From Diadema antillarum (lineage: Eukaryota): DNA of 64,000 nt. The stretch spans positions 558,001 through 622,000 of the forward strand of contig NW_027271025.1 of the NCBI RefSeq assembly GCF_040938485.1. Reading direction: 5' to 3'. Both the position numbers and the translations under genes were made by a program. The notes beneath the pieces are model-generated. The model ran no database searches and was not told where the DNA came from. It was given only the letters and a program-made list of their open reading frames with translations. This document shows, piece after piece, positions 1 to 26,101 of this stretch; within the stretch, counting starts at the first letter, position 1, and every line of letters begins with the position of its first letter.

Positions 1-1488
1 GGGCATACGCTCGAACTGGTAAAACCCCAAAGGACAAGTGAAGGCCGTCTTCTCCTTGTCAGATTCACGCATCGGGATTTGATAGAATCCCGACTTTAAG
101 TCGATAACAGAAAACCATTTACTGCCACTCAGGGAATCAATGGCCTCCTGTATCAGGGGCACTGTGTACTGGTCGGGAATGGTACGAGAATTGAGTGTAC
201 GGTAGTCGACGCACATTCTCAAAGTACCATTCTTTTTCCGAACCAGCACAATTGGAGAGGCATAGGGACTCTTAGACTCCTTAATTATGTTGTTCTCCAA
301 CAGCTGTTGAAGATGTTGCTGCAAGTCCCTAAGATCAGAGGGAGGCACCCTCCGAGACCTCTCACGGAATGGTGTGTCATCGTTAACACGAATCTGATGC
401 TCCGCATAGCCTGTACTGCCTAGGTCAAATTCATGCCTGGAGAACACATCACTCCTCTGCCTGCACTGATTGAGCAGCCTTTCTTTCCACTCCGGGGAAA
501 TCGGGCCCCAATTGATGGGCAGCTCACTAACGTCAACTTGAGGGGAAGGGGTGTTATCGCCTACATTAGCACCTACTTGGGAATGGGTTGCCTCGGTGTA
601 ACTGTGAGGCTGGGTAGGAAAACTACTAGGGGTAGGGAAACACTTGTCGGGGACATAGGCATCTACTATTGGGCAGTTGCCAGGGACAGTGATAGACTCA
701 GGGCTACTATTGGTCACCAGCACCCTTACCTTTCCAATCGCACCACCTGACAATTTTTGTACTCCTGGGGCTATGTGTAACCCACTTGGAAGTCTGCTGT
801 GGGGATTGGACTCTACGAAAACAGTCATTTCTTCTTTCAGGGGATTCCTAATTTGGGCGGTCATTACCAATTTGGAGTGGGGAGGTATTTGCGTGCTATG
901 TCCTTTCTTGGTCCTAGCAGTGCCCAATTTGCCATCAGGGGACACCTTCTCTTGTTTCGATATGCTGGCGTAGATATCCCTGCAGGTAGCACTTATCTGC
1001 AATGACTGGGCAAAGCGTGCTCCAGCCATCCTCCTACAAGATTCAAAACAGTGCCTGAAAAGTCCTGAATTAGTGCCAATAATCACTCTATGGTCACAGG
1101 GACGCTGGGGGTCTGGTACTACAAGAGCCAATGTACTAAACTCAGTCCCTGTGCCAGCAAATGACCGTTCAAAACCTATGTTGACGTAAGCCCAACCCAG
1201 ATAGGGCATAGTCCCATCTCCTCCATGGTACAGGACTAGGTCACTCAGTCCATGCAATTCCCTATCTAGTGTGTCGAAAAGGCTCTTGTGTATAAGAGTG
1301 ACCTGAGACCCACTATCAAGAAGGCATTTTGTCTCCTTTCCATCTATCCAACATTTTGGGTTGATAGCATCTCCTACTAAACCTTCAGGAACATCGTTCT
1401 TGGAAACCTCAACTTTAGAAACAAGTGGGGGAGAATCTATTTTTGGGGCCCCTGGTTTCCCCTTCCCAGGCGCCCTTTCTCGTTTCCC
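1..1488 (-). CDS. pol: Pol of unit 1 (protease and start of RT), cut by the window edge
   Basis: Same sequence as unit 2 at offset 9387. Protease motif LLDSGSQVT is present. Confidence 0.9.
1428..1488 (-). promoter_or_regulatory. -1 ribosomal frameshift signal (G GGA AAC plus predicted pseudoknot); copies at 10815-10875, 20204-20264, 29596-29656
   Basis: In-phase heptamer, 6-nt spacer, stem GGGCGCCUGG/CCAGGGGCCC, and loop GGGGA complementary to downstream UCCCC. pol is in the -1 frame and has no ATG near its start. Confidence 0.8.
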
Positions 1489-2870
1489 TGGTTGCCAAGG
1501 ATGTAGTTGACAAGTCTTTTACTCAGTACGTCAGGGGGAACAGAATTTTGGCAATTTCTACTGATATGGCCCTCCTCTCCACACTTGAAGCAAACAACAC
1601 CAGTATTACTCTGCTGGGACGACTGAGATTTGGGGGGATTATTGGTGGGTTGGGGTGCTGGTGGAGGTGCTGGTTGGGGAAGGACATGGGGTTGAGGGGC
1701 TGCGTGGGGTGGCAGAATAGAGGGCTCTACCTTACGGTGGGCAGCCTGCTTTGGTTTTGGGCTAACGGGGGGTCTCGAGGCAGACAGAGATTTCTTCACC
1801 CTTTCCTCTTCTTCCTGCTTCCTCACTGAAGACAGGAGTTCCAGGAAGGATGGTGGTTTCTCCAGGCGCTCCCTGAGCTGTAGGTTTACTAGGAGCATTT
1901 CATGGTAGAGGATGCCCCTGATGAATTGTCGCAGTCTCACCTTGTTGGCGTCATGTGGCTTGACAACTCCCCGCCTAACCACATGGCGCATGACTTCCTG
2001 TAAGCGAGAAAGATACTCAGAGGGAGACTCACCTTCAGCCTGGACTGTCTGATGAAATCTGACAAACAGTTCATCATCTGTGTCAGTATCGCCAAAAGCC
2101 AGATCCAGAGCCCTGAGGTAGTCTGCAGAGCAGGCCTGGGGATTCTCACGCCTAAGGTCTGTAATGATGCTTGACGCAGGCGGACGCAATGACTCACGAA
2201 TGCGCTTGCGCCGCTCAGCATCATCCAGAGTCTGCCACTCCTCCATCTGGCTCTCAACGTGCTCTATCCAGATGGGGTAGCTATCCTCATCACGCGCTGC
2301 TGTCTTTGCACCAGAGAAGCATCGCAGTTTCCGATACCCTGTGGTCAGCCCACACCGTGCTAGTGAAGCTGCTAAAATTGGGATGTCTCGATCAGGGAAG
2401 GACATGGATGGTTCACTGATACCAGGGGAAGGGGGTGGAAGGTTGTTAGTAGTAGGGATGTCTTGAGACTGGACTTCCTGAGCTCTACGTCCTGCTTTTC
2501 TCCATTCCCTAACTAAACCTCTCTCCCTCAGGTCCTTGACACTGACCCTATTTCCTCTGACTGGTCCTAAACCGTCTAACCTCACTACTCTGCACATAGT
2601 CTCCCCATCTACTGGAATGACAATCTGTGCCTGTAATCCTAACATAGCAACTGCATCTTCGAATTCACACAGGAGCAATGTTTCCCCTGTATCGGGATCA
2701 TCCCGTCTTAACACCTCAAGTAATGTGGGATATAACTCTGACAGTGCCAGTGCAAACACCTCTGTTGGCACAGTCTTTATACCTGTTGCAAGTAGGAGGG
2801 CATTCTCTACTCTAATCTCCTCCTTCTTGCACCAATCCTGACCAATCTGCTTCAAACTTTTACCTGCCAT
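1437..2870 (-). CDS. gag: Gag, PNMA/Ma-like capsid with CCHC zinc knuckle (unit 1, 477 aa)
   Basis: Contains RKLRCFSG...W...LRPPA...YLRALDLAFG...Q..GE..SEYLSRL (PNMA-type capsid) and CFKCGEEGHISRNC. First ATG (MAGKSL, context GCGATGG) is at 2870; the ORF track start at 2960 is a TTG. Confidence 0.93.
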   Translation of the reverse strand: MAGKSLKQIGQDWCKKEEIRVENALLLATGIKTVPTEVFALALSELYPTLLEVLRRDDPDTGETLLLCEFEDAVAMLGLQAQIVIPVDGETMCRVVRLDGLGPVRGNRVSVKDLRERGLVREWRKAGRRAQEVQSQDIPTTNNLPPPSPGISEPSMSFPDRDIPILAASLARCGLTTGYRKLRCFSGAKTAARDEDSYPIWIEHVESQMEEWQTLDDAERRKRIRESLRPPASSIITDLRRENPQACSADYLRALDLAFGDTDTDDELFVRFHQTVQAEGESPSEYLSRLQEVMRHVVRRGVVKPHDANKVRLRQFIRGILYHEMLLVNLQLRERLEKPPSFLELLSSVRKQEEEERVKKSLSASRPPVSPKPKQAAHRKVEPSILPPHAAPQPHVLPQPAPPPAPQPTNNPPKSQSSQQSNTGVVCFKCGEEGHISRNCQNSVPPDVLSKRLVNYILGNQGNEKGRLGRGNQGPQK

Positions 2871-3025
2871 CGCTTTGTTTCCTGCACACGAGTGTTGGCT
2901 CTTTGGTACAATAGAACGAAAATGGTGAATGTAACAGTAACAATCAACAATGATAACCAAGACTCAGTTTCGGTAACATGTGTCACCAAACAAATGCAAT
3001 TATACAATTAAGAAACAATTATAGT

Positions 3026-3042
3026 TCCCGGACAAGCCCCCA
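3026..3042 (-). other. Primer-binding site, tRNA-Pro; copies at 12413-12429, 21802-21818, 31194-31210
   Basis: Minus strand TGGGGGCTTGTCCGGGA is complementary to the 3' end of eukaryotic tRNA-Pro (...UCCCGGACGAGCCCCCA) with one G.U pair, 5 nt after the LTR end. Confidence 0.9.
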
Positions 3043-3047
3043 ATTTA

Positions 3048-6000
3048 TGTAACCCGAATGTTACACTCCCGAGTTCATAAATAAAGAATATCACACCTGG
3101 GATTCAGTTTTGACAAAATAATCCAATGACAAACTTTATTAACTTGTTTGTCGTTCAACAAAGTACATCATTCAATTCAATATGTTCACAGACTCAAATG
3201 TAACCTTTGTTACATTAGCATAATTAAATATTTGCCAGTGTATGACGATATTTCGACTCGTTGCTGTCTCTTTGTCTCTCTCGCCGGTTATCCTGTCGAC
3301 GAGCCCAGAGTAGTCGCAAACCAGTCGTACACGGTAGCTGATGCAATGCTCAGTAGCCGTCAGTCACGCTGAACCAAGCAAAGGCTGGCCAAAGCTCTCG
3401 TCCAAATATGTATCTAGTCAAAAGAATTTATAAGACACAGGACTTTCCTAATATAGTGTCTTTCTAATCAATAATATTTCTTCAGGAGTATGGAAGTCCA
3501 CTCCAAAATCTGATCTGATACATTGTCTCTACATATACATGCCTCATAAACATATATGAGCGCATTAGACAATACAGATACAAATTCCAGTCACATACAT
3601 TCAAATGTTTGTCAATTCATTTTGACATACAGGTGCTAAATACGGTCAGAATAACTTCTCTTCAGTTAAACATTTTCAGCATCCTGAATTATATCCAACA
3701 CTGCTGCCACAAATAAAGCTTTGATCTATCTGATCGACTGGCAGTATAGTTGCTTCATCTGGGGTCGACAAATATTGTGACTCCGATTCAAATATTATAG
3801 TTTGAGTGGAAATAATGCTCCACGCACACAATAATTACACTGAGCAGTTGTACACCTTACCACGCATGTACAGTTAACATGTATACATTCTAAAGAGCAT
3901 GAATGTATAACCTTTTTATATTCACAATGGCACAACTATTCCTCACATTTAGTTCTTTGCAAGGTTCTTCACATCTAGTGGCTAGTCCTCCCCCTCTAGA
4001 GTTAAACATTCCACAATTCAATAGTGCAGTGACCTCTGTCACTCACAGGGAACGGTCAGTGGACATAAATCTGTCAGTTCAGACGAGGGGGGGGGGGTGC
4101 TGCACATTGTAGACCTCAATGTTTACGAGCATAGCCTCACTTTCTCTGAGTGTGAGGGTCTACCGGGCATTTCAATATGTATGTAATCAAATTAAAATCT
4201 GACTTCTAATGCCAAGTCAGTTTCCCAATTTCATCTGTCTAATAATGAACTTGAGTGTATGCCTAATCATGTCCATTCATAAAACATTCGAAGCGCAAAT
4301 ACCTTGAAGTGCATTGCAATATATCTTCAAATAATATACAAGCAACAATCATCAATCATCAATACTTTTGGCATAACATATGATAACTTCGGAATTTATA
4401 TACATGATATCAGAGTCTTCTTCTTAACAAGCAACCTCCATGTCTATGGATTGGGGTTCATAATTACAAACACTCTCCAATGCAATACATAACATGAGAA
4501 ATACAATGACTTACCTAGTCAAAAGAGCCAACACTCGTTTTCACTACAAGTTGCTCCACACGGCAGTCAGTGGATGTACGTGCCACAACCAGTTGTATCA
4601 CAGGCACATAAAAATTGTATATAACAATACAGCTGATGCTTGTGGGGGTCTACCAGTGTTTTGTGGTAACCTCTCAGCAGATAAATGTGTGAAAAAACTT
4701 TCTGGATCACACAGTCGATGTAACAAGCAAAGTGGGTGCAGGCCTCAAAGCGCTGGCAGGAAGCAGATATGCCTATTTGCTCCAAAGCTATGGGCTTTTA
4801 TAATTTTCTGTCTCTCTGTAAAATGTTAATATTACAAACTTTCTCGAGAAAATCAGAAACTTCCAGGAAGTTAACTGACCAGCAGAAATTTCATTGGTTC
4901 ATGTTTCTATGACATCATTCAAAGTCTGCCTCATTGGCTAGAGGTCACTCATTCCCCTTGACTTCCAGGAACATTACTGACGTACTGACCATCCACTTGG
5001 CCAGACAAAGTCTTAACATTGACCAAGGGCAGTAACGACAGGCTTTCCAGTCACTCTCGAGCATTCTGCCTACAGGGCTTTAAAGTTGCACTCCTGTGAC
5101 CTTGGTCACTAGAGCTGCTGCCTAACCAGCATAGCTATATAACACATTGTTTATACTCATGCAAACACCGATCTAGTTAACATACTAGACAAATCGTATA
5201 GCATAAGTCATAAGAGCACTCAATTAGAATATAGAGACATAATTATATCTCATTTGCATAAATGATGTATTAAACATAACCACTGCACATACATATCTCT
5301 TATGCTGAAGTGCGTGGATCACACTTTGTTCTGAACACATGACATATCAAATAATAATCTTGCAAAAAGTCATATCCTTTCAGCCATTGATCATAGTAGC
5401 ACAACAGTATCTGTAATATAAAAGGTAACACGAGCAAAGTAAATCTAGTAATGTATGGAGTTACTCTACTTTAAGGCACACGCAAAGCTAGCCTAAACAG
5501 TTCATTGGAAATTAGGGGGGGGGTATGTGAGAAGAAAGGAATAGGAGGGGACAGAATTTGGGCTAGACGTGCACTCTACGTCATTGTCACAGAAAATGTT
5601 GGTCTACAGTTAGAACCAGTCCACTCTGTATAGGCTTTGCCCATGGTAGGACACTGTCCCTAAATCCCAAAGCAACTACTACTTTGTCCTAGCAAGAATG
5701 ACCTTCCTCTTCTGAGACATGGTCCTTTCGTTTCTCTTGATGTGCCTACACACCAACAAAAGGGAGGGGTGCTTAAAACAATATCCCTAGACTGGCTAGC
5801 TTGCTCCATCCTTGAGTTTTATTACACCTACATAGTCTAACACCAGCAGGGGCGTTTCACAGGGCTTGACCAGTCTCAATACACACAGGCTTACAATTGG
5901 ACATTGGCTATTGGGGTCAAAGGCTGAAGGGGAAATCTTAAGACTAATCTTGGGGGTTACTAGTACACTGGTCGAGGGGTTGTTGGAAAACAGGTGGGGT

Positions 6001-6131
6001 ACGGACGTCAGAGGAGGGATGAATGGAGGGGGTGGTGATAACAGTGACCATGGGTCTTCCAAGGAAGTAGGAATCTAGTCTGACGACATTTCTGGAGAAA
6101 TCTTAGTAACCCAAATTTTGGTGGGGTTACA
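3048..6131 (-). repeat. LTR 1 (3084 bp), shared between units
   Basis: Ends are TGTAACCC...GGGTTACA (8-bp terminal inverted repeat, TG...CA). PBS lies 5 nt outside one end and PPT abuts the other. Confidence 0.95.
4796..4971 (-). promoter_or_regulatory. Probable LTR promoter: TATAAAA, two CCAAT boxes, a CRE-like site and two TTCCAGGAA sites (present in all four LTRs)
   Basis: TATAAAA at 4796-4802 (minus). CCAAT at 4893-4897 and 4933-4937 (minus). TGACATCA at 4910-4917. TTCCAGGAA at 4861-4869 and 4963-4971. Order and orientation fit element-sense transcription. Confidence 0.6.
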
Positions 6132-6143
6132 TCCTCCCCTTTC
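6132..6143 (-). other. Polypurine tract; copies at 15521-15532 and 24913-24924
   Basis: Minus strand GAAAGGGGAGGA lies directly before the LTR TGTAAC. Confidence 0.9.
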
Positions 6144-6173
6144 AAACCAGGGTTCACTCCTGTGAACCTTTGA

Positions 6174-6911
6174 TTAATCAAAGCCAAAGATCTTACGCTT
6201 AAGGTCAGCAAAAAATCCTGATGAAGTTGCTTGCCTAGCACCAGAGGGTTCACCAAGGGTATCGTACTGCATGCGTAGCGGCGGCCTTGAAGAGCGAGTT
6301 GAGCGCCTGATGGATTGCGGGGCAGGCTCTGAATCGATTGCTTGCTTTGCATTTTGCGCTTGCTCAACCTCGGGCTCTGCTAGAGTATGAGGGGCGTTAC
6401 CTCTGGACTCTGCGTCTGGGGGTAAAGGGCTAGTGTGTCTACTCTCTTCCTCCATGCTCTCCCCTCTCAAATCGGGTACTGCATCATCCGGTGTTGCTCT
6501 ACCAGAACCACTGGATGCACTTGTGGCATCTATGCTGATGTCACTGCCAGCCTGGTTCTCTAAGTCTGAGTCGGTTGATGTCTCCTCAGTAGTGGGGTCA
6601 GGGGATAAAACGGAACCGCCGGAAACACCTGTGTCACTCACTACATCAGCTGTGTTGACCTGTTCAGGGGTCTCGCTGGTAGTCTCAGAGGGAATACTGG
6701 GAGGTTGGGAGGGGACAAACTCTGGCGCATTTACGTTAAGTACTGAATGTGGGCGGTTAATGTGCTTGCGTACACCCCTCATCACTTGAGTCTGAACTAT
6801 CAGACTCTTCCTCACTCGGAGGGGCAATGGACCTTTTGGAACGGGTCCGATCAGCTGGATTCCTTTTCTTACCTGGTCTCTGGGTCTCTGAGTTATGGGC
6901 TGGGGCCTCAT
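6174..6911 (-). CDS. 3' tail ORF in the +1 frame to pol, low complexity, with a PAM2-like motif and RRSTR..RPP...Y..LGEP; copies at 15563-16300 and 24955-25692
   Basis: Seen in the ORF track. The terminal motif resembles Pol C-termini of related Gypsy elements, so this may be a frameshifted Pol tail rather than an independent ORF. Confidence 0.6.
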   Translation of the reverse strand: MRPQPITQRPRDQVRKGIQLIGPVPKGPLPLRVRKSLIVQTQVMRGVRKHINRPHSVLNVNAPEFVPSQPPSIPSETTSETPEQVNTADVVSDTGVSGGSVLSPDPTTEETSTDSDLENQAGSDISIDATSASSGSGRATPDDAVPDLRGESMEEESRHTSPLPPDAESRGNAPHTLAEPEVEQAQNAKQAIDSEPAPQSIRRSTRSSRPPLRMQYDTLGEPSGARQATSSGFFADLKRKIFGFD

Positions 6912-7320
6912 TCAAGTACTCTATGGGTAGGAGAAGGTTGCGGTGTAGGGTGCGTGTCCTACCAATCCCGTCTTCAGGTGCAACTTCGTAAACCGGCATA
7001 TCAGGGTTGAGTCGCTTTGTGATGACATAAGGGTTCGCATACCATCTATCAGCTAATTTCTGCTTACCAGTCAGTCCAACGTTCCTGACAAGGACGCGAT
7101 CGCCAGGTTTCAGGCCATTGGCTCGCACTTTCGCATCATAGCGGACCTTGTTGGCACTGGCAGACTTGTTGGATGCAGCTGACGCAAGTTTATACGCCCG
7201 CGTAAGTTGATCGCGCAAACCACTGACGTACTTCACGTGGTCAGTCCCAGTGAAATTGTCAGGGCTTGTGCCAAATCGCAGATCAACAGGCAGTCTAGCT
7301 TCCCTACCGAACATGAGGAA
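6757..7320 (-). pseudogene. Integrase C-terminal part (GPY/F-type module and acidic tail), in frame behind the amber codon; copies at 16146-16709 and 25538-26101
   Basis: GFSP-TAG-FLMFGREARLPVDL...PYVITKR...YEV...RTLHRNLLLP is the normal continuation of Gypsy integrase. Confidence 0.88.
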
Positions 7321-10300
7321 CTAAGGTGAGAAACCAGTACTGTCATTCCTTGAACAATTGTAAGCGTGTACAAGTGCACTTACGTACTTGCTCCAATTTG
7401 CCTTCTTCTCCTCCTCCAGGGTCCCTAGCATGTCCAGTAGCGTTCTGTTGAAACGCTCAGGCTGAGGGTCTCCCTGGGGATGGTAAGGAGTTGTCCTTGA
7501 TTTCTTAATGCCAAGGAGCCTTGACAGCTCATGGATCACTTTACTCTCAAAGTCCCTACCTTGATCAGAATGAAGGCGTTGGGGCAGACCATAATGTACA
7601 AAGAAGTTCTCCCACAGGACCTTGGCGACAGTGGCAGCAGTCTGATCCTTCGTTGGGAAGGCTTGTGCGTATCGTGTGTAGTGATCCGTCACTACCAAGA
7701 TAGACTTCTTATTCGAGCGGTCTGGTTCTAGGGAGAGAAAGTCCATGCAAACCAGCTCCAGGGGGCTGGTTGTGTGAATACTCACCAATGGGGCTGCTGG
7801 CTTTGGAGGAGTCTTTCTTGCTATACAACGAGGGCAATGCTTGACCCACTCCGTAATGTCAGCACTCATCTTTGGCCAGTAGAACCTGTCTCTAGCCAAC
7901 GCTATGGACTTCTCGATTCCAAGGTGGCCAACACTGTCGTGTATGCCCCTCATTGCCTCGACACGGCGCTGGGCAGGCAATACTAACTGGTGATGGCGGT
8001 TCCCTAAGGAGTCAGTGAAAGTTCTGTAGAGGACTCCTTTGCACAGAACTAGCCTGTCGAACTCGCGGAGTATCAGGGCAGCCTCTCTTGAAAGGCCGGT
8101 ATAAGACTGTGGCCTCTCCCCACGTTCAACATAATCCCTGACTAGTTTCAGTTGCGGATCTGCCTTTTGAGCCTGTGCCCAGTCTACTACATTCAGGTCT
8201 GAGCCCTTCGCATACAGACCTGGGATAGACTCTGCACTGGCACACAGGGTCTCAACGTATGGCTGGCTTCTATGAGGAGAGTTGGCTGAAACATAATGCG
8301 TCTGACAGAAGGCAGAGAGTGTGGACACTTTCTCACCTGAGTCTGACGTCTCATGCAGCCTTGCCTCCAGATCACTAATCTTGCACTGCTGGCGAGCCTC
8401 AAACTCCTTGTCGAGGCCGGGAGGATGTGGTTTCCGTGACAGTACATCTGCTTCAATGTTCGTCTTTCCTGGCTTATAATGGATGGAAAAATCAAAGCAG
8501 GAAAGTGCAGCAAGCCATCTATGTCCTGTGGCATCGAGTTTTGCCGATGTCAGGACATATGTTAGTGGGTTATTATCAGTCATAACCCGCGCACCTTTTG
8601 CTGCATACAGATAATCCCTGAACTTGTCGGTAACTGCCCACTTTAGAGCAAGAAATTCCAGCTTGTGGGCTGGATAGTTCTTCTCACTGTGGGACAGTCC
8701 CCGACTTCCATATGCCACTGGACGAAGCTTACCTCCATGATCTTGATACAGGACACCACCCAGTCCATCACGGCTGGCATCAACATGGAGCACAAAGGGC
8801 TTTGACAGGTCTGCGAAGGCTAAGACTGGGGCTGTGACCAGACAATGCTTCAAAGCCTGAAAAGCATTCTCACACTCCTCAGTCCAAGCATCACCAAGGG
8901 GGTCACTTGCCTTTCGTGCATCCGGGCTCGGATCTTTCTTTGGAGGTGGACGTCCTCGCTTCCTGGGGTAAACGCACCCACTTGTAAGTGCGTTCAAAGG
9001 ACGGGAAATCTTGGCATAGTCCTTTATGAATCGCCGGTAATAGCCAGCAAATCCTAAGAAAGACTTGACATGCCTCACTGTCTGTGGCCTGGGCCAGGTT
9101 CTTACATCGGCCACTTTGTCTGGGTCTGTCTGTACCCCAGCCTCGGAGACTACATGACCAAGGTACCTAACCGACTGACAGCAAAATTGGCATTTTTCTG
9201 GGGACACCTTCAAGCCAAATTGCTGCAACCTATCCAGTACCCTAGCCAGGCGCTCCTCCATTTCCTCCAGCGTTTTGGAGAAGATTATCAGGTCATCCAT
9301 GTACACCAACACCTCTAACATGTTCAGACCTGACATGCACTTCTCCATCAGCCTCTGGAAGGTTGCTGGTGCTCCCTTCACCCCTTGGGGCATACGCTCG
9401 AACTGGTAAAACCCCAAAGGACAAGTGAAGGCCGTCTTCTCCTTGTCAGATTCACGCATCGGGATTTGATAGAATCCCGACTTTAAGTCGATAACAGAAA
9501 ACCATTTACTGCCACTCAGGGAATCAATGGCCTCCTGTATCAGGGGCACTGTGTACTGGTCGGGAATGGTACGAGAATTGAGTGTACGGTAGTCGACGCA
9601 CATTCTCAAAGTACCATTCTTTTTCCGAACCAGCACAATTGGAGAGGCATAGGGACTCTTAGACTCCTTAATTATGTTGTTCTCCAACAGCTGTTGAAGA
9701 TGTTGCTGCAAGTCCCTAAGATCAGAGGGAGGCACCCTCCGAGACCTCTCACGGAATGGTGTGTCATCGTTAACACGAATCTGATGCTCCGCATAGCCTG
9801 TACTGCCTAGGTCAAATTCATGCCTGGAGAACACATCACTCCTCTGCCTGCACTGATTGAGCAGCCTTTCTTTCCACTCCGGGGAAATCGGGCCCCAATT
9901 GATGGGCAGCTCACTAACGTCAACTTGAGGGGAAGGGGTGTTATCGCCTACATTAGCACCTACTTGGGAATGGGTTGCCTCGGTGTAACTGTGAGGCTGG
10001 GTAGGAAAACTACTAGGGGTAGGGAAACACTTGTCGGGGACATAGGCATCTACTATTGGGCAGTTGCCAGGGACAGTGATAGACTCAGGGCTACTATTGG
10101 TCACCAGCACCCTTACCTTTCCAATCGCACCACCTGACAATTTTTGTACTCCTGGGGCTATGTGTAACCCACTTGGAAGTCTGCTGTGGGGATTGGACTC
10201 TACGAAAACAGTCATTTCTTCTTTCAGGGGATTCCTAATTTGGGCGGTCATTACCAATTTGGAGTGGGGAGGTATTTGCGTGCTATGTCCTTTCTTGGTC

Positions 10301-10875
10301 CTAGCAGTGCCCAATTTGCCATCAGGGGACACCTTCTCTTGTTTCGATATGCTGGCGTAGATATCCCTGCAGGTAGCACTTATCTGCAATGACTGGGCAA
10401 AGCGTGCTCCAGCCATCCTCCTACAAGATTCAAAACAGTGCCTGAAAAGTCCTGAATTAGTGCCAATAATCACTCTATGGTCACAGGGACGCTGGGGGTC
10501 TGGTACTACAAGAGCCAATGTACTAAACTCAGTCCCTGTGCCAGCAAATGACCGTTCAAAACCTATGTTGACGTAAGCCCAACCCAGATAGGGCATAGTC
10601 CCATCTCCTCCATGGTACAGGACTAGGTCACTCAGTCCATGCAATTCCCTATCTAGTGTGTCGAAAAGGCTCTTGTGTATAAGAGTGACCTGAGACCCAC
10701 TATCAAGAAGGCATTTTGTCTCCTTTCCATCTATCCAACATTTTGGGTTGATAGCATCTCCTACTAAACCTTCAGGAACATCGTTCTTGGAAACCTCAAC
10801 TTTAGAAACAAGTGGGGGAGAATCTATTTTTGGGGCCCCTGGTTTCCCCTTCCCAGGCGCCCTTTCTCGTTTCCC
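7321..10875 (-). CDS. pol: Pol (PR-RT-RNase H-IN) of unit 2, in the -1 frame to gag, ending at an amber codon inside integrase
   Basis: The frame is open from the slippery site. Motifs: protease LLDSGSQVT (upstream of the ORF-track start), RT YMDD, RNase H VDAS...ELFLA-like KLEFLALKWAV, IN zinc finger H..GH...C..C and D,D35E (MDF, SDQG, PERFN). Confidence 0.93.
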   Translation of the reverse strand, partial: GKRERAPGKGKPGAPKIDSPPLVSKVEVSKNDVPEGLVGDAINPKCWIDGKETKCLLDSGSQVTLIHKSLFDTLDRELHGLSDLVLYHGGDGTMPYLGWAYVNIGFERSFAGTGTEFSTLALVVPDPQRPCDHRVIIGTNSGLFRHCFESCRRMAGARFAQSLQISATCRDIYASISKQEKVSPDGKLGTARTKKGHSTQIPPHSKLVMTAQIRNPLKEEMTVFVESNPHSRLPSGLHIAPGVQKLSGGAIGKVRVLVTNSSPESITVPGNCPIVDAYVPDKCFPTPSSFPTQPHSYTEATHSQVGANVGDNTPSPQVDVSELPINWGPISPEWKERLLNQCRQRSDVFSRHEFDLGSTGYAEHQIRVNDDTPFRERSRRVPPSDLRDLQQHLQQLLENNIIKESKSPYASPIVLVRKKNGTLRMCVDYRTLNSRTIPDQYTVPLIQEAIDSLSGSKWFSVIDLKSGFYQIPMRESDKEKTAFTCPLGFYQFERMPQGVKGAPATFQRLMEKCMSGLNMLEVLVYMDDLIIFSKTLEEMEERLARVLDRLQQFGLKVSPEKCQFCCQSVRYLGHVVSEAGVQTDPDKVADVRTWPRPQTVRHVKSFLGFAGYYRRFIKDYAKISRPLNALTSGCVYPRKRGRPPPKKDPSPDARKASDPLGDAWTEECENAFQALKHCLVTAPVLAFADLSKPFVLHVDASRDGLGGVLYQDHGGKLRPVAYGSRGLSHSEKNYPAHKLEFLALKWAVTDKFRDYLYAAKGARVMTDNNPLTYVLTSAKLDATGHRWLAALSCFDFSIHYKPGKTNIEADVLSRKPHPPGLDKEFEARQQCKISDLEARLHETSDSGEKVSTLSAFCQTHYVSANSPHRSQPYVETLCASAESIPGLYAKGSDLNVVDWAQAQKADPQLKLVRDYVERGERPQSYTGLSREAALILREFDRLVLCKGVLYRTFTDSLGNRHHQLVLPAQRRVEAMRGIHDSVGHLGIEKSIALARDRFYWPKMSADITEWVKHCPRCIARKTPPKPAAPLVSIHTTSPLELVCMDFLSLEPDRSNKKSILVVTDHYTRYAQAFPTKDQTAATVAKVLWENFFVHYGLPQRLHSDQGRDFESKVIHELSRLLGIKKSRTTPYHPQGDPQPERFNRTLLDMLGTLEEEKKANWSKYVSALVHAYNCSRNDSTGFSP

Positions 10876-12257
10876 TGGTTGCCAAGGATGTAGTTGACAA
10901 GTCTTTTACTCAGTACGTCAGGGGGAACAGAATTTTGGCAATTTCTACTGATATGGCCCTCCTCTCCACACTTGAAGCAAACAACACCAGTATTACTCTG
11001 CTGGGACGACTGAGATTTGGGGGGATTATTGGTGGGTTGGGGTGCTGGTGGAGGTGCTGGTTGGGGAAGGACATGGGGTTGAGGGGCTGCGTGGGGTGGC
11101 AGAATAGAGGGCTCTACCTTACGGTGGGCAGCCTGCTTTGGTTTTGGGCTAACGGGGGGTCTCGAGGCAGACAGAGATTTCTTCACCCTTTCCTCTTCTT
11201 CCTGCTTCCTCACTGAAGACAGGAGTTCCAGGAAGGATGGTGGTTTCTCCAGGCGCTCCCTGAGCTGTAGGTTTACTAGGAGCATTTCATGGTAGAGGAT
11301 GCCCCTGATGAATTGTCGCAGTCTCACCTTGTTGGCGTCATGTGGCTTGACAACTCCCCGCCTAACCACATGGCGCATGACTTCCTGTAAGCGAGAAAGA
11401 TACTCAGAGGGAGACTCACCTTCAGCCTGGACTGTCTGATGAAATCTGACAAACAGTTCATCATCTGTGTCAGTATCGCCAAAAGCCAGATCCAGAGCCC
11501 TGAGGTAGTCTGCAGAGCAGGCCTGGGGATTCTCACGCCTAAGGTCTGTAATGATGCTTGACGCAGGCGGACGCAATGACTCACGAATGCGCTTGCGCCG
11601 CTCAGCATCATCCAGAGTCTGCCACTCCTCCATCTGGCTCTCAACGTGCTCTATCCAGATGGGGTAGCTATCCTCATCACGCGCTGCTGTCTTTGCACCA
11701 GAGAAGCATCGCAGTTTCCGATACCCTGTGGTCAGCCCACACCGTGCTAGTGAAGCTGCTAAAATTGGGATGTCTCGATCAGGGAAGGACATGGATGGTT
11801 CACTGATAACAGGGGAAGGGGGTGGAAGGTTGTTAGTAGTAGGGATGTCTTGAGACTGGACTTCCTGAGCTCTACGTCCTGCTTTTCTCCATTCCCTAAC
11901 TAAACCTCTCTCCCTCAGGTCCTTGACACTGACCCTATTTCCTCTGACTGGTCCTAAACCGTCTAACCTCACTACTCTGCACATAGTCTCCCCATCTACT
12001 GGAATGACAATCTGTGCCTGTAATCCTAACATAGCAACTGCATCTTCGAATTCACACAGGAGCAATGTTTCCCCTGTATCGGGATCATCCCGTCTTAACA
12101 CCTCAAGTAATGTGGGATATAACTCTGACAGTGCCAGTGCAAACACCTCTGTTGGCACAGTCTTTATACCTGTTGCAAGTAGGAGGGCATTCTCTACTCT
12201 AATCTCCTCCTTCTTGCACCAATCCTGACCAATCTGCTTCAAACTTTTACCTGCCAT
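10824..12257 (-). CDS. gag: Gag (unit 2), with a G>V change in the proline-rich linker
   Basis: Identical to unit 1 except PSPVISE vs PSPGISE (c>a at 11809). Confidence 0.93.
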   Translation of the reverse strand: MAGKSLKQIGQDWCKKEEIRVENALLLATGIKTVPTEVFALALSELYPTLLEVLRRDDPDTGETLLLCEFEDAVAMLGLQAQIVIPVDGETMCRVVRLDGLGPVRGNRVSVKDLRERGLVREWRKAGRRAQEVQSQDIPTTNNLPPPSPVISEPSMSFPDRDIPILAASLARCGLTTGYRKLRCFSGAKTAARDEDSYPIWIEHVESQMEEWQTLDDAERRKRIRESLRPPASSIITDLRRENPQACSADYLRALDLAFGDTDTDDELFVRFHQTVQAEGESPSEYLSRLQEVMRHVVRRGVVKPHDANKVRLRQFIRGILYHEMLLVNLQLRERLEKPPSFLELLSSVRKQEEEERVKKSLSASRPPVSPKPKQAAHRKVEPSILPPHAAPQPHVLPQPAPPPAPQPTNNPPKSQSSQQSNTGVVCFKCGEEGHISRNCQNSVPPDVLSKRLVNYILGNQGNEKGRLGRGNQGPQK

Positions 12258-12434
12258 CGCTTTGTTTCCTGCACACGAGTGTTGGCTCTTTGGTACAATA
12301 GAACGAAAATGGTGAATGTAACAGTAACAATCAACAATGATAACCAAGACTCAGTTTCGGTAACATGTGTCACCAAACAAATGCAATTATACAATTAAGA
12401 AACAATTATAGTTCCCGGACAAGCCCCCAATTTA

Positions 12435-15400
12435 TGTAACCCGAATGTTACACTCCCGAGTTCATAAATAAAGAATATCACACCTGGGATTCAGTTTTGA
12501 CAAAATAATCCAATGACAAACTTTATTAACTTGTTTGTCGTTCAACAAAGTACATCATTCAATTCAATATGTTCACAGACTCAAATGTAACCTTTGTTAC
12601 ATTAGCATAATTAAATATTTGCCAGTGTATGACGATATTTCGACTCGTTGCTGTCTCTTTGTCTCTCTCGCCGGTTATCCTGTCGACGAGCCCAGAGTAG
12701 TCGCAAACCAGTCGTACACGGTAGCTGATGCAATGCTCAGTAGCCGTCAGTCACGCTGAACCAAGCAAAGGCTGGCCAAAGCTCTCGTCCAAATATGTAT
12801 CTAGTCAAAAGAATTTATAAGACACAGGACTTTCCTAATATAGTGTCTTTCTAATCAATAATATTTCTTCAGGAGTATGGAAGTCCACTCCAAAATCTGA
12901 TCTGATACATTGTCTCTACATATACATGCCTCATAAACATATATGAGCGCATTAGACAATACAGATACAAATTCCAGTCACATACATTCAAATGTTTGTC
13001 AATTCATTTTGACATACAGGTGCTAAATACGGTCAGAATAACTTCTCTTCAGTTAAACATTTTCAGCATCCTGAATTATATCCAACACTGCTGCCACAAA
13101 TAAAGCTTTGATCTATCTGATCGACTGGCAGTATAGTTGCTTCATCTGGGGTCGACAAATATTGTGACTCCGATTCAAATATTATAGTTTGAGTGGAAAT
13201 AATGCTCCACGCACACAATAATTACACTGAGCAGTTGTACACCTTACCACGCATGTACAGTTAACATGTATACATTCTAAAGAGCATGAATGTATAACAT
13301 TTTTATATTCACAATGGCACAACTATTCCTCACATTTAGTTCTTTGCAAGGTTCTTCACATCTAGTGGCTAGTCCTCCCCCTCTAGAGTTAAACATTCCA
13401 CAATTCAATAGTGCAGTGACCTCTGTCACTCACAGGGAACGGTCAGTGGACATAAATCTGTCAGTTCAGACGAGGGGGGGGGGGTGCTGCACATTGTAGA
13501 CCTCAATGTTTACGAGCATAGCCTCACTTTCTCTGAGTGTGAGGGTCTACCGGGCATTTCAATATGTATGTAATCAAATTAAAATCTGACTTCTAATGCC
13601 AAGTCAGTTTCCCAATTTCATCTGTCTAATAATGAACTTGAGTGTATGCCTAATCATGTCCATTCATAAAACATTCGAAGCGCAAATACCTTGAAGTGCA
13701 TTGCAATATATCTTCAAATAATATACAAGCAACAATCATCAATCATCAATACTTTTGGCATAACATATGATAACTTCGGAATTTATATACATGATATCAG
13801 AGTCTTCTTCTTAACAAGCAACCTCCATGTCTATGGATTGGGGTTCATAATTACAAACACTCTCCAATGCAATACATAACATGAGAAATACAATGACTTA
13901 CCTAGTCAAAAGAGCCAACACTCGTTTTCACTACAAGTTGCTCCACACGGCAGTCAGTGGATGTACGTGCCACAACCAGTTGTATCACAGGCACATAAAA
14001 ATTGTATATAACAATACAGCTGATGCTTGTGGGGGTCTACCAGTGTTTTGTGGTAACCTCTCAGCAGATAAATGTGTGAAAAAACTTTCTGGATCACACA
14101 GTCGATGTAACAAGCAAAGTGGGTGCAGGCCTCAAAGCGCTGGCAGGAAGCAGATATGCCTATTTGCTCCAAAGCTATGGGCTTTTATAATTTTCTGTCT
14201 CTCTGTAAAATGTTAATATTACAAACTTTCTCGAGAAAATCAGAAACTTCCAGGAAGTTAACTGACCAGCAGAAATTTCATTGGTTCATGTTTCTATGAC
14301 ATCATTCAAAGTCTGCCTCATTGGCTAGAGGTCACTCATTCCCCTTGACTTCCAGGAACATTACTGACGTACTGACCATCCACTTGGCCAGACAAAGTCT
14401 TAACATTGACCAAGGGCAGTAACGACAGGCTTTCCAGTCACTCTCGAGCATTCTGCCTACAGGGCTTTAAAGTTGCACTCCTGTGACCTTGGTCACTAGA
14501 GCTGCTGCCTAACCAGCATAGCTATATAACACATTGTTTATACTCATGCAAACACCGATCTAGTTAACATACTAGACAAATCGTATAGCATAAGTCATAA
14601 AAGCACTCAATTAGAATATAGAGACATAATTATATCTCATTTGCATAAATGATGTATTAAACATAACCACTGCACATACATATCTCTTATGCTGAAGTGC
14701 GTGGATCACACTTTGTTCTGAACACATGACATATCAAATAATAATCTTGCAAAAAGTCATATCCTTTCAGCCATTGATCATAGTAGCACAACAGTATCTG
14801 TAATATAAAAGGTAACACGAGCAAAGTAAATCTAGTAATGTATGGAGTTACTCTACTTTAAGGCACACGCAAAGCTAGCCTAAACAGTTCATTGGAAATT
14901 AGGGGGGGGGGGTATGTGAGAAGAAAGGAATAGGAGGGGACAGAATTTGGGCTAGACGTGCACTCTACGTCATTGTCACAGAAAATGTTGGTCTACAGTT
15001 AGAACCAGTCCACTCTGTATAGGCTTTGCCCATGGTAGGACACTGTCCCTAAATCCCAAAGCAACTACTACTTTGTCCTAGCAAGAATGACCTTCCTCTT
15101 CTGAGACATGGTCCTTTCGTTTCTCTTGATGTGCCTACACACCAACAAAAGGGAGGGGTGCTTAAAACAATATCCCTAGACTGGCTAGCTTGCTCCATCC
15201 TTGAGTTTTATTACACCTACATAGTCTAACACCAGCAGGGGCGTTTCACAGGGCTTGACCAGTCTCAATACACACAGGCTTACAATTGGACATTGGCTAT
15301 TGGGGTCAAAGGCTGAAGGGGAAATCTTAAGACTAATCTTGGGGGTTACTAGTACACTGGTCGAGGGGTTGTTGGAAAACAGGTGGGGTACGGACGTCAG

Positions 15401-15520
15401 AGGAGGGATGAATGGAGGGGGTGGTGATAACAGTGACCATGGGTCTTCCAAGGAAGTAGGAATCTAGTCTGACGACATTTCTGGAGAAATCTTAGTAACC
15501 CAAATTTTGGTGGGGTTACA
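12435..15520 (-). repeat. LTR 2 (3086 bp), shared
   Basis: Same termini and PBS/PPT flanks. Differs from LTR1 by G-tract length and at least two substitutions. Confidence 0.95.
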
Positions 15521-16709
15521 TCCTCCCCTTTCAAACCAGGGTTCACTCCTGTGAACCTTTGATTAATCAAAGCCAAAGATCTTACGCTTAAGGTCAGCAA
15601 AAAATCCTGATGAAGTTGCTTGCCTAGCACCAGAGGGTTCACCAAGGGTATCGTACTGCATGCGTAGCGGCGGCCTTGAAGAGCGAGTTGAGCGCCTGAT
15701 GGATTGCGGGGCAGGCTCTGAATCGATTGCTTGCTTTGCATTTTGCGCTTGCTCAACCTCGGGCTCTGCTAGAGTATGAGGGGCGTTACCTCTGGACTCT
15801 GCGTCTGGGGGTAAAGGGCTAGTGTGTCTACTCTCTTCCTCCATGCTCTCCCCTCTCAAATCGGGTACTGCATCATCCGGTGTTGCTCTACCAGAACCAC
15901 TGGATGCACTTGTGGCATCTATGCTGATGTCACTGCCAGCCTGGTTCTCTAAGTCTGAGTCGGTTGATGTCTCCTCAGTAGTGGGGTCAGGGGATAAAAC
16001 GGAACCGCCGGAAACACCTGTGTCACTCACTACATCAGCTGTGTTGACCTGTTCAGGGGTCTCGCTGGTAGTCTCAGAGGGAATACTGGGAGGTTGGGAG
16101 GGGACAAACTCTGGCGCATTTACGTTAAGTACTGAATGTGGGCGGTTAATGTGCTTGCGTACACCCCTCATCACTTGAGTCTGAACTATCAGACTCTTCC
16201 TCACTCGGAGGGGCAATGGACCTTTTGGAACGGGTCCGATCAGCTGGATTCCTTTTCTTACCTGGTCTCTGGGTCTCTGAGTTATGGGCTGGGGCCTCAT
16301 TCAAGTACTCTATGGGTAGGAGAAGGTTGCGGTGTAGGGTGCGTGTCCTACCAATCCCGTCTTCAGGTGCAACTTCGTAAACCGGCATATCAGGGTTGAG
16401 TCGCTTTGTGATGACATAAGGGTTCGCATACCATCTATCAGCTAATTTCTGCTTACCAGTCAGTCCAACGTTCCTGACAAGGACGCGATCGCCAGGTTTC
16501 AGGCCATTGGCTCGCACTTTCGCATCATAGCGGACCTTGTTGGCACTGGCAGACTTGTTGGATGCAGCTGACGCAAGTTTATACGCCCGCGTAAGTTGAT
16601 CGCGCAAACCACTGACGTACTTCACGTGGTCAGTCCCAGTGAAATTGTCAGGGCTTGTGCCAAATCGCAGATCAACAGGCAGTCTAGCTTCCCTACCGAA
16701 CATGAGGAA

Positions 16710-21646: not shown

Positions 21647-21823
21647 CGCTTTGTTTCCTGCACACGAGTGTTGGCTCTTTGGTACAATAGAACGAAAATG
21701 GTGAATGTAACAGTAACAATCAACAATGATAACCAAGACTCAGTTTCGGTAACATGTGTCACCAAACAAATGCAATTATACAATTAAGAAACAATTATAG
21801 TTCCCGGACAAGCCCCCAATTTA

Positions 21824-24800: not shown

Positions 24801-24912
24801 TGAATGGAGGGGGTGGTGATAACAGTGACCATGGGTCTTCCAAGGAAGTAGGAATCTAGTCTGACGACATTTCTGGAGAAATCTTAGTAACCCAAATTTT
24901 GGTGGGGTTACA
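21824..24912 (-). repeat. LTR 3 (3089 bp), shared
   Basis: Same termini and PBS/PPT flanks. G-tracts are 13 and 12 nt. Confidence 0.95.
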
Positions 24913-26101
24913 TCCTCCCCTTTCAAACCAGGGTTCACTCCTGTGAACCTTTGATTAATCAAAGCCAAAGATCTTACGCTTAAGGTCAGCAAAAAATCCT
25001 GATGAAGTTGCTTGCCTAGCACCAGAGGGTTCACCAAGGGTATCGTACTGCATGCGTAGCGGCGGCCTTGAAGAGCGAGTTGAGCGCCTGATGGATTGCG
25101 GGGCAGGCTCTGAATCGATTGCTTGCTTTGCATTTTGCGCTTGCTCAACCTCGGGCTCTGCTAGAGTATGAGGGGCGTTACCTCTGGACTCTGCGTCTGG
25201 GGGTAAAGGGCTAGTGTGTCTACTCTCTTCCTCCATGCTCTCCCCTCTCAAATCGGGTACTGCATCATCCGGTGTTGCTCTACCAGAACCACTGGATGCA
25301 CTTGTGGCATCTATGCTGATGTCACTGCCAGCCTGGTTCTCTAAGTCTGAGTCGGTTGATGTCTCCTCAGTAGTGGGGTCAGGGGATAAAACGGAACCGC
25401 CGGAAACACCTGTGTCACTCACTACATCAGCTGTGTTGACCTGTTCAGGGGTCTCGCTGGTAGTCTCAGAGGGAATACTGGGAGGTTGGGAGGGGACAAA
25501 CTCTGGCGCATTTACGTTAAGTACTGAATGTGGGCGGTTAATGTGCTTGCGTACACCCCTCATCACTTGAGTCTGAACTATCAGACTCTTCCTCACTCGG
25601 AGGGGCAATGGACCTTTTGGAACGGGTCCGATCAGCTGGATTCCTTTTCTTACCTGGTCTCTGGGTCTCTGAGTTATGGGCTGGGGCCTCATTCAAGTAC
25701 TCTATGGGTAGGAGAAGGTTGCGGTGTAGGGTGCGTGTCCTACCAATCCCGTCTTCAGGTGCAACTTCGTAAACCGGCATATCAGGGTTGAGTCGCTTTG
25801 TGATGACATAAGGGTTCGCATACCATCTATCAGCTAATTTCTGCTTACCAGTCAGTCCAACGTTCCTGACAAGGACGCGATCGCCAGGTTTCAGGCCATT
25901 GGCTCGCACTTTCGCATCATAGCGGACCTTGTTGGCACTGGCAGACTTGTTGGATGCAGCTGACGCAAGTTTATACGCCCGCGTAAGTTGATCGCGCAAA
26001 CCACTGACGTACTTCACGTGGTCAGTCCCAGTGAAATTGTCAGGGCTTGTGCCAAATCGCAGATCAACAGGCAGTCTAGCTTCCCTACCGAACATGAGGA
26101 A

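What the first reader, a model, noticed from the sequence alone, without database searches (positions are those of the whole stretch)
6711..6746. A retrotransposon-encoded PAM2 (poly(A)-binding-protein-interacting) motif
Seen: SVLNVNAPEFVP in the otherwise low-complexity tail ORF, also at 16100-16135 and 25492-25527. Established: the PAM2 consensus xxLNxxAxEFxP (Paip1, Paip2, eRF3, ataxin-2, Tob) binds the MLLE domain of PABPC, sits in disordered regions, and depends on the L, A and F positions, all present here. Inference: the Pol/IN tail may recruit PABP to capture polyadenylated genomic RNA, influence termination or frameshifting, or compete with host PAM2 proteins. I do not know of this being described for Gypsy Pol, but could not search.
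Basis: partly seen in the sequence, partly recalled or inferred. Interest (0 to 1): 0.72.

Follow-up and report, generated by a model that had tools for sequence, protein, structure and literature searches.

The report
PABP-docking motif in Gypsy Pol tail
A family of Gypsy-type jumping genes carries, in the floppy tail behind its integrase, a textbook copy of the short peptide that cell proteins use to dock onto the poly(A)-binding protein; about a third of related elements from sea urchin to frogs and fish keep it, although the copies in this window are themselves broken.

Summary
SVLNVNAPEFVP is encoded on the minus strand at 6711-6746, 16100-16135 and 25492-25527. These are three units of a 9.39-kb tandem LTR-internal-LTR array of a Ty3/Gypsy element. 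The motif passes Pfam PAM2 (22.9 bits, cut-off 20).

The window copies are defective. An in-frame amber sits in integrase, and a 17-nt gap just upstream puts the motif out of frame. Elsewhere in the genome, intact copies encode one 1582-aa Pol (PR-RT-RH-IN plus a ~250-aa disordered tail) with the PAM2 in frame.

The motif is not chance. A matrix built only from the host's own PAM2 genes finds it in 38 of 118 Pol tails of relatives chosen without regard to the tail (1.2 expected). It always lies 50-125 residues behind the integrase C-terminal domain, and its flanks do not align. Positions that did not define the search also match the PAM2 consensus.

Binding to the PABPC MLLE domain is inferred only: the co-fold score is 0.41 against 0.02 for the best control, which the tool rates as weak support.

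I found no paper describing PAM2 in LTR retrotransposons. PAM2 mimicry by RNA viruses and a different PABPC1 contact in LINE-1 ORF2p are known. The scan noted the same motif on another piece of this genome (s1-229859).

The parts
6711..6746 (-). PAM2 motif SVLNVNAPEFVP, unit 1 (residues 56-67 of the 245-aa tail ORF)
16100..16135 (-). PAM2 motif, unit 2 (identical 36 nt)
25492..25527 (-). PAM2 motif, unit 3 (identical 36 nt)
6174..6911 (-). Tail ORF (245 aa plus stop). From about residue 47 on it corresponds to the Pol C-terminal tail of intact family members. Residues 1-46 are an out-of-frame reading of the end of integrase.
6768..6786 (-). Junction where the window copies lack 17 nt present in other copies and in a sister species, which puts the PAM2 out of frame with integrase. 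The same junction occurs at 16157-16175 and 25549-25567.
6246..6308 (-). Second conserved tail motif, RRSTRSSRPPLRMQYDTLGEP, near the C-terminus
6177..6218 (-). C-terminal predicted helix GFFADLKRKIFGFD, the only secondary structure predicted in the tail
6757..7320 (-). Integrase C-terminal domain and acidic Ser/Asp/Glu patch, in the same frame as Pol but cut off from it by the amber codon
7321..7323 (-). In-frame TAG inside integrase, present in every unit (also at about 16710-16712 and 26102-26104)
7324..10905 (-). Pol open frame: protease (LLDSGS), RT, RNase H, integrase zinc finger and core
10824..12347 (-). Gag with a PNMA-type capsid domain and a CCHC zinc knuckle
12412..12429 (-). Primer-binding site TGGGGGCTTGTCCGGGAA. 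The assignment to tRNA-Pro is from memory.
12435..15520 (-). 5' LTR of the unit that holds the 6711-6746 motif (3086 bp, ends TGTAACCC...GGGTTACA), shared with the next unit as its 3' LTR
6132..6142 (-). Polypurine tract AAAGGGGAGGA, directly upstream of the 3' LTR
3048..6131 (-). 3' LTR of that unit
1..34301 (-). Tandem LTR-internal-LTR array, 3.65 units in the window. The outermost LTR ends at 34301 and the array continues beyond the window start.

Best explanation
The motif is a genuine PAM2 short linear motif, kept by selection, in the disordered C-terminal tail of the Pol (integrase) protein of a deuterostome Ty3/Gypsy lineage with a PNMA-type Gag. In intact family members Pol is one 1582-aa protein (PR-RT-RH-IN-tail). 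The PAM2 lies about 60 residues behind the integrase C-terminal domain, after an acidic Ser/Asp/Glu patch. Those points are shown. The most likely mechanism is inferred. [quoted passage not shown] This ties newly made Gag-Pol or integrase to PABPC-coated poly(A) tails. Because the tail is the last part of Pol to leave the ribosome, the nearest PABPC is on the RNA that encoded it. The element would thereby be helped to assemble particles on, or stabilise and translate, its own polyadenylated genomic RNA. This is a route to cis-preference that parallels the PABPC1 contact of LINE-1 ORF2p but uses a different PABPC domain. The three copies in this window are relics. An amber codon in integrase and a 17-nt gap upstream of the motif mean they cannot make a Pol-PAM2 protein, and they multiplied as DNA in a tandem array.
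For: The motif matches the curated profile: 22.9 bits in the window ORF and 22.4 bits in an intact Pol, against a cut-off of 20. In a whole-genome scan the element copies score 26.4 bits; the host's own hits score 27.3, 26.9, 22.8 and 22.2 bits (27.3 ataxin-2-like, 22.8 eRF3-like), and 21 of the 29 hits are this element. The only PDB sequence hit of the 40-aa tail piece is the Paip1 PAM2 peptide (1JH4_B/3NTW). Five independent genomic copies have the motif in frame in Pol ORFs of 1582-2064 aa. Conservation: the core pattern occurs in 23 of 120 homologue tails against 0.48 in shuffled tails, 0 in 164,000 residues of Pol bodies and 1 in reversed tails. A matrix built only from host PAM2 genes flags 28 of 120 tails (1.2 expected). 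In a set chosen without the tail it flags 38 of 118 (1.2 expected), including 24 of 67 new proteins. The motif always lies 50-125 residues after the integrase C-terminal domain, and its flanks carry no signal above noise. Positions not fixed by the search match the PAM2 consensus (N4, P5, E9, V/I11). All 8 members of the query's own clade have it. Among 10 genomic copies the key residues vary only by one L-to-F change, while the next 133 codons show 87 replacement against 25 silent changes. A sister species shows only a change at a free position and a silent change in the motif. The tail is predicted to be disordered, with mean pLDDT 53 and a local rise at the motif. The host encodes a PABPC-type MLLE. 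The co-fold of the tail piece with a PABPC MLLE scored 0.41 against 0.02 for the best control; the runs agreed in at least 88% of contacts and the partner pLDDT was at least 55. Precedents exist: LINE-1 ORF2p binds PABPC1 and this is proposed to give cis-preference (PMC7617806), and RNA-virus proteins mimic PAM2 and bind the PABP1 C-terminal domain (PMC10132805).
Against: No binding was measured. The tool rates the co-fold pass as weak (at 0.60 or under, such passes are more often wrong than right unless the guess was likely beforehand), and it may reflect memory of solved PAM2-MLLE complexes. The Pfam model itself flags only 5 of 120 homologue tails at E <= 0.1. About two thirds of relatives lack the motif, and some carry other tail motifs instead, so it is dispensable for the lineage as a whole. 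PAM2 also fits the MLLE of the nuclear ligase UBR5, which the host has. No RNA run holding the element was found. The window copies are out of frame. The downstream role (cis-capture of genomic RNA) rests on analogy only.
Confidence: 0.6

Rival explanations
1. The motif is functional, but its partner is the MLLE domain of the HECT ubiquitin ligase UBR5, a mainly nuclear protein, rather than PABPC. It would control integrase turnover or link the pre-integration complex to chromatin or DNA-damage factors.
For: The host genome encodes a UBR5-type MLLE (L040/L041). The MLLE of UBR5 is a known second MLLE domain (reference 66 of PMC10132805, seen; its binding of PAM2 peptides is from my own knowledge). 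Integrase tails are typically nuclear tethering modules (established knowledge for Ty5, Tf1 and MLV).
Against: The motif matches PABPC ligands of high affinity (Paip1, ataxin-2, eRF3). From my own knowledge UBR5 binds PAM2 more weakly. PABPC is far more abundant.
Confidence: 0.12
2. The conserved L...A..F.P island serves another purpose, such as another host partner, a protease site or an intramolecular contact, and its likeness to PAM2 is incidental.
For: Binding is unmeasured. The Pfam model reaches E <= 0.1 in only 5 of 120 tails. The tails hold several other conserved motifs of unknown function.
Against: The positions left free by the search independently reproduce PAM2 preferences (N4, P5, acidic 6, P8, E9, V/I11). 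A matrix built from host PAM2 genes alone recovers the motifs. The co-fold pass is specific against three controls.
Confidence: 0.15
3. The motif is a chance match in a Pro/Glu/Ser-rich, low-complexity tail, with no function.
For: A loose ELM-style pattern is expected 0.35 times per 39 kb in six frames. The window copies are pseudogenes.
Against: The strict match was never seen in shuffles. The excess over composition-matched shuffles in relatives is more than 30-fold, at a constant position, and survives tail-blind sampling.
Confidence: 0.03

Closest known systems
Cellular PAM2 proteins (Paip1, Paip2, ataxin-2, eRF3, Tob, PAN3; Pfam PF07145, ELM LIG_PAM2_1)
   Same: It has the same 12-residue consensus, xxLNxxAxEFxP, in a disordered region. 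The closest solved peptide is Paip1 (SKLSVNAPEFYPSG against SVLNVNAPEFVPSQ). It scores like the host's ataxin-2-like and eRF3-like motifs.
   Different: The carrier is a retrotransposon Pol/integrase, not an mRNA-metabolism factor. There is no PAM1 or other PABP-binding module, and binding is not measured.
Viral PAM2 mimics: Hendra/Nipah P/V/C (LNPAAVPFVP), HCoV-229E N, Berne virus N (PMC10132805)
   Same: A parasitic genetic element copies the host PAM2 to reach the PABP C-terminal (MLLE) domain, and the motif sits in a disordered stretch.
   Different: Those are cytoplasmic RNA viruses, with measured affinities and a crystal structure. Here it is an LTR retrotransposon whose Pol also acts in the nucleus, and the evidence is comparative only.
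LINE-1 ORF2p PIE element binding PABPC1 (PMC7617806)
   Same: A retrotransposon polymerase makes direct contact with PABPC, and this is proposed to give co-translational cis-preference for its own polyadenylated RNA.
   Different: PIE is an N-terminal linker segment that binds RRM1, not a PAM2 that binds MLLE. LINE-1 uses the poly(A) tail as its priming site, whereas an LTR element primes from tRNA at the PBS.
Integrase C-terminal tethering modules (chromodomain of chromoviruses, MLV IN tail binding BET proteins, Ty5 IN binding Sir4; from established knowledge)
   Same: A short host-binding module is appended behind the integrase C-terminal domain, in a variable tail that swaps motifs between clades.
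   Different: Those modules tether to chromatin and steer integration. A PAM2 points to a cytoplasmic mRNA-bound protein (or UBR5), so the step served is probably not target-site choice.

Membership tests
PAM2 motif (Pfam PF07145 / MLLE ligands) | Sequence match to the PAM2 profile above the curated cut-off | tested here: met
   22.9 bits (window ORF) and 22.4 bits (intact Pol) against a cut-off of 20; 26.4 bits in the genome scan.
PAM2 motif (Pfam PF07145 / MLLE ligands) | Key residues Leu3, Ala7, Phe10 and Pro12 present | tested here: met
   SVLNVNAPEFVP. In 10 genomic copies these residues change only by one L-to-F.
PAM2 motif (Pfam PF07145 / MLLE ligands) | Lies in an intrinsically disordered, accessible region | tested here: met
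   The tail is 84% polar or disorder-promoting residues, with 14% order-promoting residues against 31% in the Pol body. The AF2 model has mean pLDDT 53 and no secondary structure except the last helix. These are predictions only.
PAM2 motif (Pfam PF07145 / MLLE ligands) | Conserved relative to its flanks across homologues | tested here: met
   38 of 118 tail-blind relatives against 1.2 expected, with flanks at noise level.
PAM2 motif (Pfam PF07145 / MLLE ligands) | Host has an MLLE-domain partner | tested here: met
   PF00658 hits in the genome are a PABPC-type exon (94.6 bits), a UBR5-type MLLE and a third MLLE.
PAM2 motif (Pfam PF07145 / MLLE ligands) | Direct, motif-dependent binding to MLLE | tested here: inconclusive
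   The co-fold score was 0.41 against 0.02 for the best of 3 controls. The tool rates this as weak support, possibly from memory of solved complexes. No measurement is possible with these tools.
PAM2 motif (Pfam PF07145 / MLLE ligands) | Expressed as part of a protein (for the copies in this window) | tested here: not met
   The window copies have an amber codon in integrase and a 17-nt gap that puts the motif out of frame. This feature is met by other genomic copies.
Ty3/Gypsy LTR retrotransposon | LTRs with TG...CA ends, PBS, PPT, and gene order gag then PR-RT-RH-IN | tested here: met
   3086-bp LTRs with TGTAACCC...GGGTTACA ends, a PBS and a PPT. Pfam finds PNMA, zf-CCHC, Asp_protease_2 (weak), RVT_1, RT_RNaseH, Integrase_H2C2 and rve in that order.

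The most novel reading that the evidence does not exclude
Direct capture of PABPC through a PAM2 in the integrase tail is an old, recurrently retained strategy of a large deuterostome Ty3/Gypsy clade. It serves the same end as the unrelated PABPC1-binding element of LINE-1 ORF2p. If so, LTR and non-LTR retrotransposons converged on PABPC as the handle that couples a freshly translated polymerase to its own polyadenylated RNA.
Probability: 0.3. Interest if true: 0.75.

Novelty: new member of a known kind. Interest (0 to 1): 0.6.

Why it matters
How LTR retrotransposons pick their own RNA for packaging, and what the long variable tails behind their integrases do, is poorly understood outside a few yeast and retroviral models. 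A canonical, selectively retained PABP-docking motif in Pol gives a concrete hypothesis that can be tested with peptides. It links LTR elements to the same host factor that LINE-1 needs. It extends PAM2 mimicry from RNA viruses to genomic parasites. It also shows that in this genome most PAM2-coding sequences belong to a transposon (21 of 29 hits). Host PAM2-MLLE networks could therefore face competition whenever the family is expressed.

Tried and rejected
- **Plus-strand reading:** it gives GDKLWRIYVKY*, so the motif is on the minus strand.
- **Separate ORF3:** I considered that the tail is a separate third ORF. Other genomic copies read from integrase into the tail in one frame, and the window copy has a 17-nt gap there, so this was rejected.
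- **Pfam PAM2 scan of homologue tails:** only 5 of 120 reach E <= 0.1. The short model is too strict to measure prevalence. I used a pattern with shuffles and a matrix from host PAM2 genes instead.
- **Selection bias in the first homologue set:** that set could have been enriched for the motif because the query region included the tail. I repeated the search with a tail-free query region and the signal rose, so the bias was rejected.
- **Single origin of the motif:** on an integrase tree the label needs at least 8-11 changes, so gain and loss cannot be told apart.
- **Host PABPC MLLE for co-folding:** the host exon stops inside the last helix and gene models read into the intron. I used the MLLE of a full-length invertebrate-like PABPC from the representative search instead.
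- **Complex prediction:** the result was weak support only.
- **Host organism from cluster names:** none are given. The closest named relative is a Strongylocentrotus purpuratus protein, 66% identical over Pol.
- **RNA evidence:** no RNA run holds the stretch, which does not show that it is silent.
- **Literature:** searches for PAM2 or MLLE with retrotransposon, Gypsy, Ty3 or integrase found nothing relevant. Two searches failed on term syntax.

Full report
**1. The observation**

The reverse strand of 6711-6746 translates to SVLNVNAPEFVP. The plus strand does not. The same 36 nt recur at 16100-16135 and 25492-25527. The motif lies in a 245-aa ORF (6174-6911, minus).

Pfam's PAM2 model (PF07145) scores this ORF at 22.9 bits, E 6e-5, above its curated cut-off of 20. 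The strict pattern LN.NA.EF.P never occurred in 200 shuffles of the non-redundant window. A loose ELM-style pattern would occur 0.35 times by chance. So it is the quality of the match, not the pattern class alone, that is unusual.

**2. What surrounds it**

Window 1-34301 is 3.65 tandem units of 9387-9392 bp at 99.9% identity. Each unit is one LTR plus one internal region of a minus-strand Ty3/Gypsy element:
- LTR of 3086 bp with TGTAACCC...GGGTTACA ends.
- PBS TGGGGGCTTGTCCGGGAA. The tRNA-Pro assignment is from memory.
- Gag with a PNMA-type capsid domain and a CCHC knuckle.
- Pol with protease (LLDSGS), RT, RNase H, integrase zinc finger and core.
- Polypurine tract AAAGGGGAGGA directly before the next LTR.

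The array ends exactly at an LTR 5' end (34301).

The window copies are defective in two ways, and every unit shares both defects:
- An in-frame TAG at 7321-7323 splits integrase. This agrees with the scan's note s1-208699.
- The integrase frame stops at 6757-6759, while the PAM2 is in another frame.

Alignment with other genomic copies shows why the frames differ. The window copy lacks 17 nt immediately upstream of the motif (junction 6768-6786). Contigs of a sister species carry those 17 letters. The array therefore grew as DNA, not by retrotransposition of these units.

**3. The family has intact members with the motif in frame**

A six-frame search of the whole genome with the tail ORF found about 20 further copies at 87-95% identity. 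In these, residues 43-245 of the tail lie in long open frames. Five loci that I fetched have a Gag of 504-508 aa. In four of them a 1582-1593-aa Pol overlaps Gag in the -1 frame; at the fifth, Gag and Pol read as one 2064-aa open frame.

These copies read ...SSDSSDEEITLLFDVRKHINRPHSGLNVNAPEFVPSQPP..., continuous with integrase. Pfam on one such Pol gives PR (weak), RT, RNase H, integrase zinc and core, and PAM2 at residues 1393-1405 (22.4 bits). A further 178 residues follow the motif, and the stop lies about 45 nt before the polypurine tract.

**4. Is the motif conserved more than its flanks?**

*Across species.* The first homologue set used the query region 1150-1582.
- The closest named relative is a Strongylocentrotus purpuratus protein, 66% identical over Pol.
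- All 120 listed hits have tails of 95-360 residues (two outliers at 731 and 804) behind the integrase C-terminal domain.
- The minimal PAM2 core [LFMIV]...A..F.P occurs in 23 of 120 tails. It occurs in 0.48 of composition-matched shuffled tails on average (maximum 4 in 500 shuffles), in 0 of 164,000 residues of Pol bodies, and in 1 reversed tail.
- It always lies 52-124 residues behind the integrase domain.
- In an alignment of the nearest relatives the motif is an island, next to a second island at the C-terminus, in otherwise unalignable sequence.
- When 22 non-redundant tails are anchored on the motif, the flanks carry 0.5-0.9 bits per position, which is the noise level. The positions that the pattern left free are enriched as in cellular PAM2s: always Leu at 3, Asn at 4 (12 of 22), Pro at 5 (13 of 22), acidic or amide at 6, Pro at 8, Glu at 9, Val or Ile at 11.

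*An independent matrix.* I built a matrix from the host's own PAM2 genes only (ataxin-2-like, eRF3-like double motif and two others). It flags 28 of 120 tails above the 1% per-tail null (1.2 expected) and 17 above the 0.1% null.

*A check for selection bias.* The first query region included the tail, so the sample could have been biased towards the motif. I repeated the search with residues 620-1330 only. In this tail-blind set, 38 of 118 tails pass (1.2 expected). Among the 67 proteins new to this set, 24 pass (0.67 expected).

*Carriers.* They include sea urchin, Xenopus, Hyperolius, Rana, Caretta, Latimeria, Acipenser and several teleosts. On an integrase tree the carriers are spread over both halves (at least 8-11 changes). 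All 8 members of the query's clade carry the motif. Some clades without it have near-variants, or other motifs at the same place such as EPFSLDLD.

*Within the genome.* Ten copies were compared:

| Region | Replacement changes | Silent changes |
|---|---|---|
| 12 motif codons | 7 | 6 |
| Next 133 codons | 87 | 25 |
| Last 45 codons | 3 | 15 |

The replacements in the motif fall at free positions, apart from one conservative L-to-F change. The sister species shows only a free-position change and a silent change inside the motif.

The motif is far better conserved than the neighbouring disordered residues.

**5. Does it fit the partner?**

- The host genome encodes a PABPC-type MLLE exon, a UBR5-type MLLE and a third MLLE domain.
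- Genome-wide, 29 sites pass the PAM2 cut-off. Of these, 21 are copies of this element (21.4-26.4 bits, most 24.5-26.4) and 8 are four host loci each listed twice (27.3, 26.9, 22.8 and 22.2 bits).
- The only PDB sequence matched by the 40-residue tail piece is the Paip1 PAM2 peptide solved with the PABP MLLE (1JH4_B, 3NTW; E 1.2, 14 aligned residues).
- The tail is predicted to be disordered: composition, and an AF2 model with mean pLDDT 53, no secondary structure except a terminal helix, and local rises at the motif and at the C-terminus.
- I co-folded window tail residues 46-85 with the MLLE of a full-length PABPC (P0159:318-412). The score was 0.41 in three runs, against 0.02 for the best of three controls. 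The runs agreed in at least 88% of contacts, and the partner pLDDT was at least 55.
- The tool rates this as weak support. At or below 0.60, only 5 of 78 solved complexes and all 4 passing mismatches fell in that range, and a pass may come from memory of solved PAM2-MLLE complexes.

Binding is therefore plausible but not shown.

**6. Mechanism**

*Shown:*
- The architecture of the element and its Pol.
- The in-frame position of the motif in intact copies.
- Predicted disorder of the tail.
- Selective retention of the motif.
- The presence of MLLE partners in the host.

*Inferred:* docking on the PABPC MLLE ties Gag-Pol or integrase to poly(A)-bound PABPC. The tail leaves the ribosome last, so the PABPC on the template RNA is the nearest one. 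This would favour assembly on the element's own genomic RNA, or prolong its translation or stability.

The precedent is LINE-1. Its ORF2p contacts PABPC1 RRM1 through its PIE element, and this is proposed to give cis-preference (PMC7617806).

*Alternatives:*
- The partner is UBR5.
- The tail acts like Paip1 or Paip2 on translation, or competes with eRF3 at termination. These are sub-variants that my data cannot separate.
- The motif has another, unrelated partner.

**7. Comparison with what is known, and novelty**

PAM2 mimicry is established for RNA viruses (Hendra/Nipah P/V/C, HCoV-229E N, Berne virus N), with measured affinities and a crystal structure (PMC10132805). Searches of the held library for PAM2 or MLLE together with retrotransposon, Gypsy, Ty3, integrase or polyprotein found no description in LTR retroelements. 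That library lacks most subscription journals.

I file the finding as a new member of a known kind: a canonical PAM2 in a new class of carrier. The scan noted the same motif on another piece of this genome (s1-229859).

**8. Limits**

- No binding or expression data exist. No RNA run holds the stretch.
A marine-metagenome run holds a small share of the stretch's words (0.13), a weak hint that the host is marine.
- The homologue sets are the best 120 of thousands of hits.
- The tree was made with FastTree on one region.

Noticed in passing
window 6246-6308 (-); L031 Pol about 1538-1558: A second tail motif near the C-terminus is even better conserved: [RK][RK]S.R(3-5)P(2-5)[YF], here RRSTRSSRPPLRMQYDTLGEP. 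It matches 56 of 120 homologue tails against 0.065 in shuffles, and the last 45 codons show 3 replacement against 15 silent changes among genomic copies. From memory it resembles arginine-anchor or CENP-C-motif-like binders of the nucleosome acidic patch. That idea is untested.
   Followed up: partly
tails of homologues P0010, P0011, P0018, P0027, P0054, P0063, P0070, P0079, P0090, P0091, P0097, P0106; and P0014, P0029, P0039, P0044: Clades that lack the PAM2 carry other short conserved motifs at about the same place in the tail (EPFSLDLD in 11 tails; DILLALDLLADHLSG in another clade). The tail seems to be a platform on which linear motifs are swapped.
   Followed up: no
window 1-34301; also G000 C447:652984-691141: The defective element forms LTR-internal-LTR tandem arrays with at least 4 internal units on this contig. 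A second array of at least 5 units, with an identical tail ORF, lies on contig C447; it may be the other haplotype. All units share the amber codon and the 17-nt gap, so the amplification happened at the DNA level.
   Followed up: partly
window 7321-7323, about 16710-16712 and about 26102-26104 (-): The same in-frame TAG in integrase is present in every unit, as in the scan's note s1-208699. Other genomic copies read through this place.
   Followed up: partly
G000 loci L036/L037, L043/L044, L045/L046, L067/L068, L069/L070: Single-copy host exons (PABPC MLLE, ataxin-2-like PAM2, eRF3-like PAM2) each appear twice on different contigs with identical scores. This suggests that the assembly holds both haplotypes.
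   Followed up: no
L038 (G000:C876:582383-582622): A third MLLE domain (73.6 bits) is encoded whole in one 80-aa open frame. It is distinct from the PABPC-type and UBR5-type domains, and its gene was not identified.
   Followed up: no
window 3048-6131 (-): The LTR is unusually long (3086 bp) and AT-richer than the coding part (GC 0.41-0.43 against 0.50). Its content was not examined.
   Followed up: no
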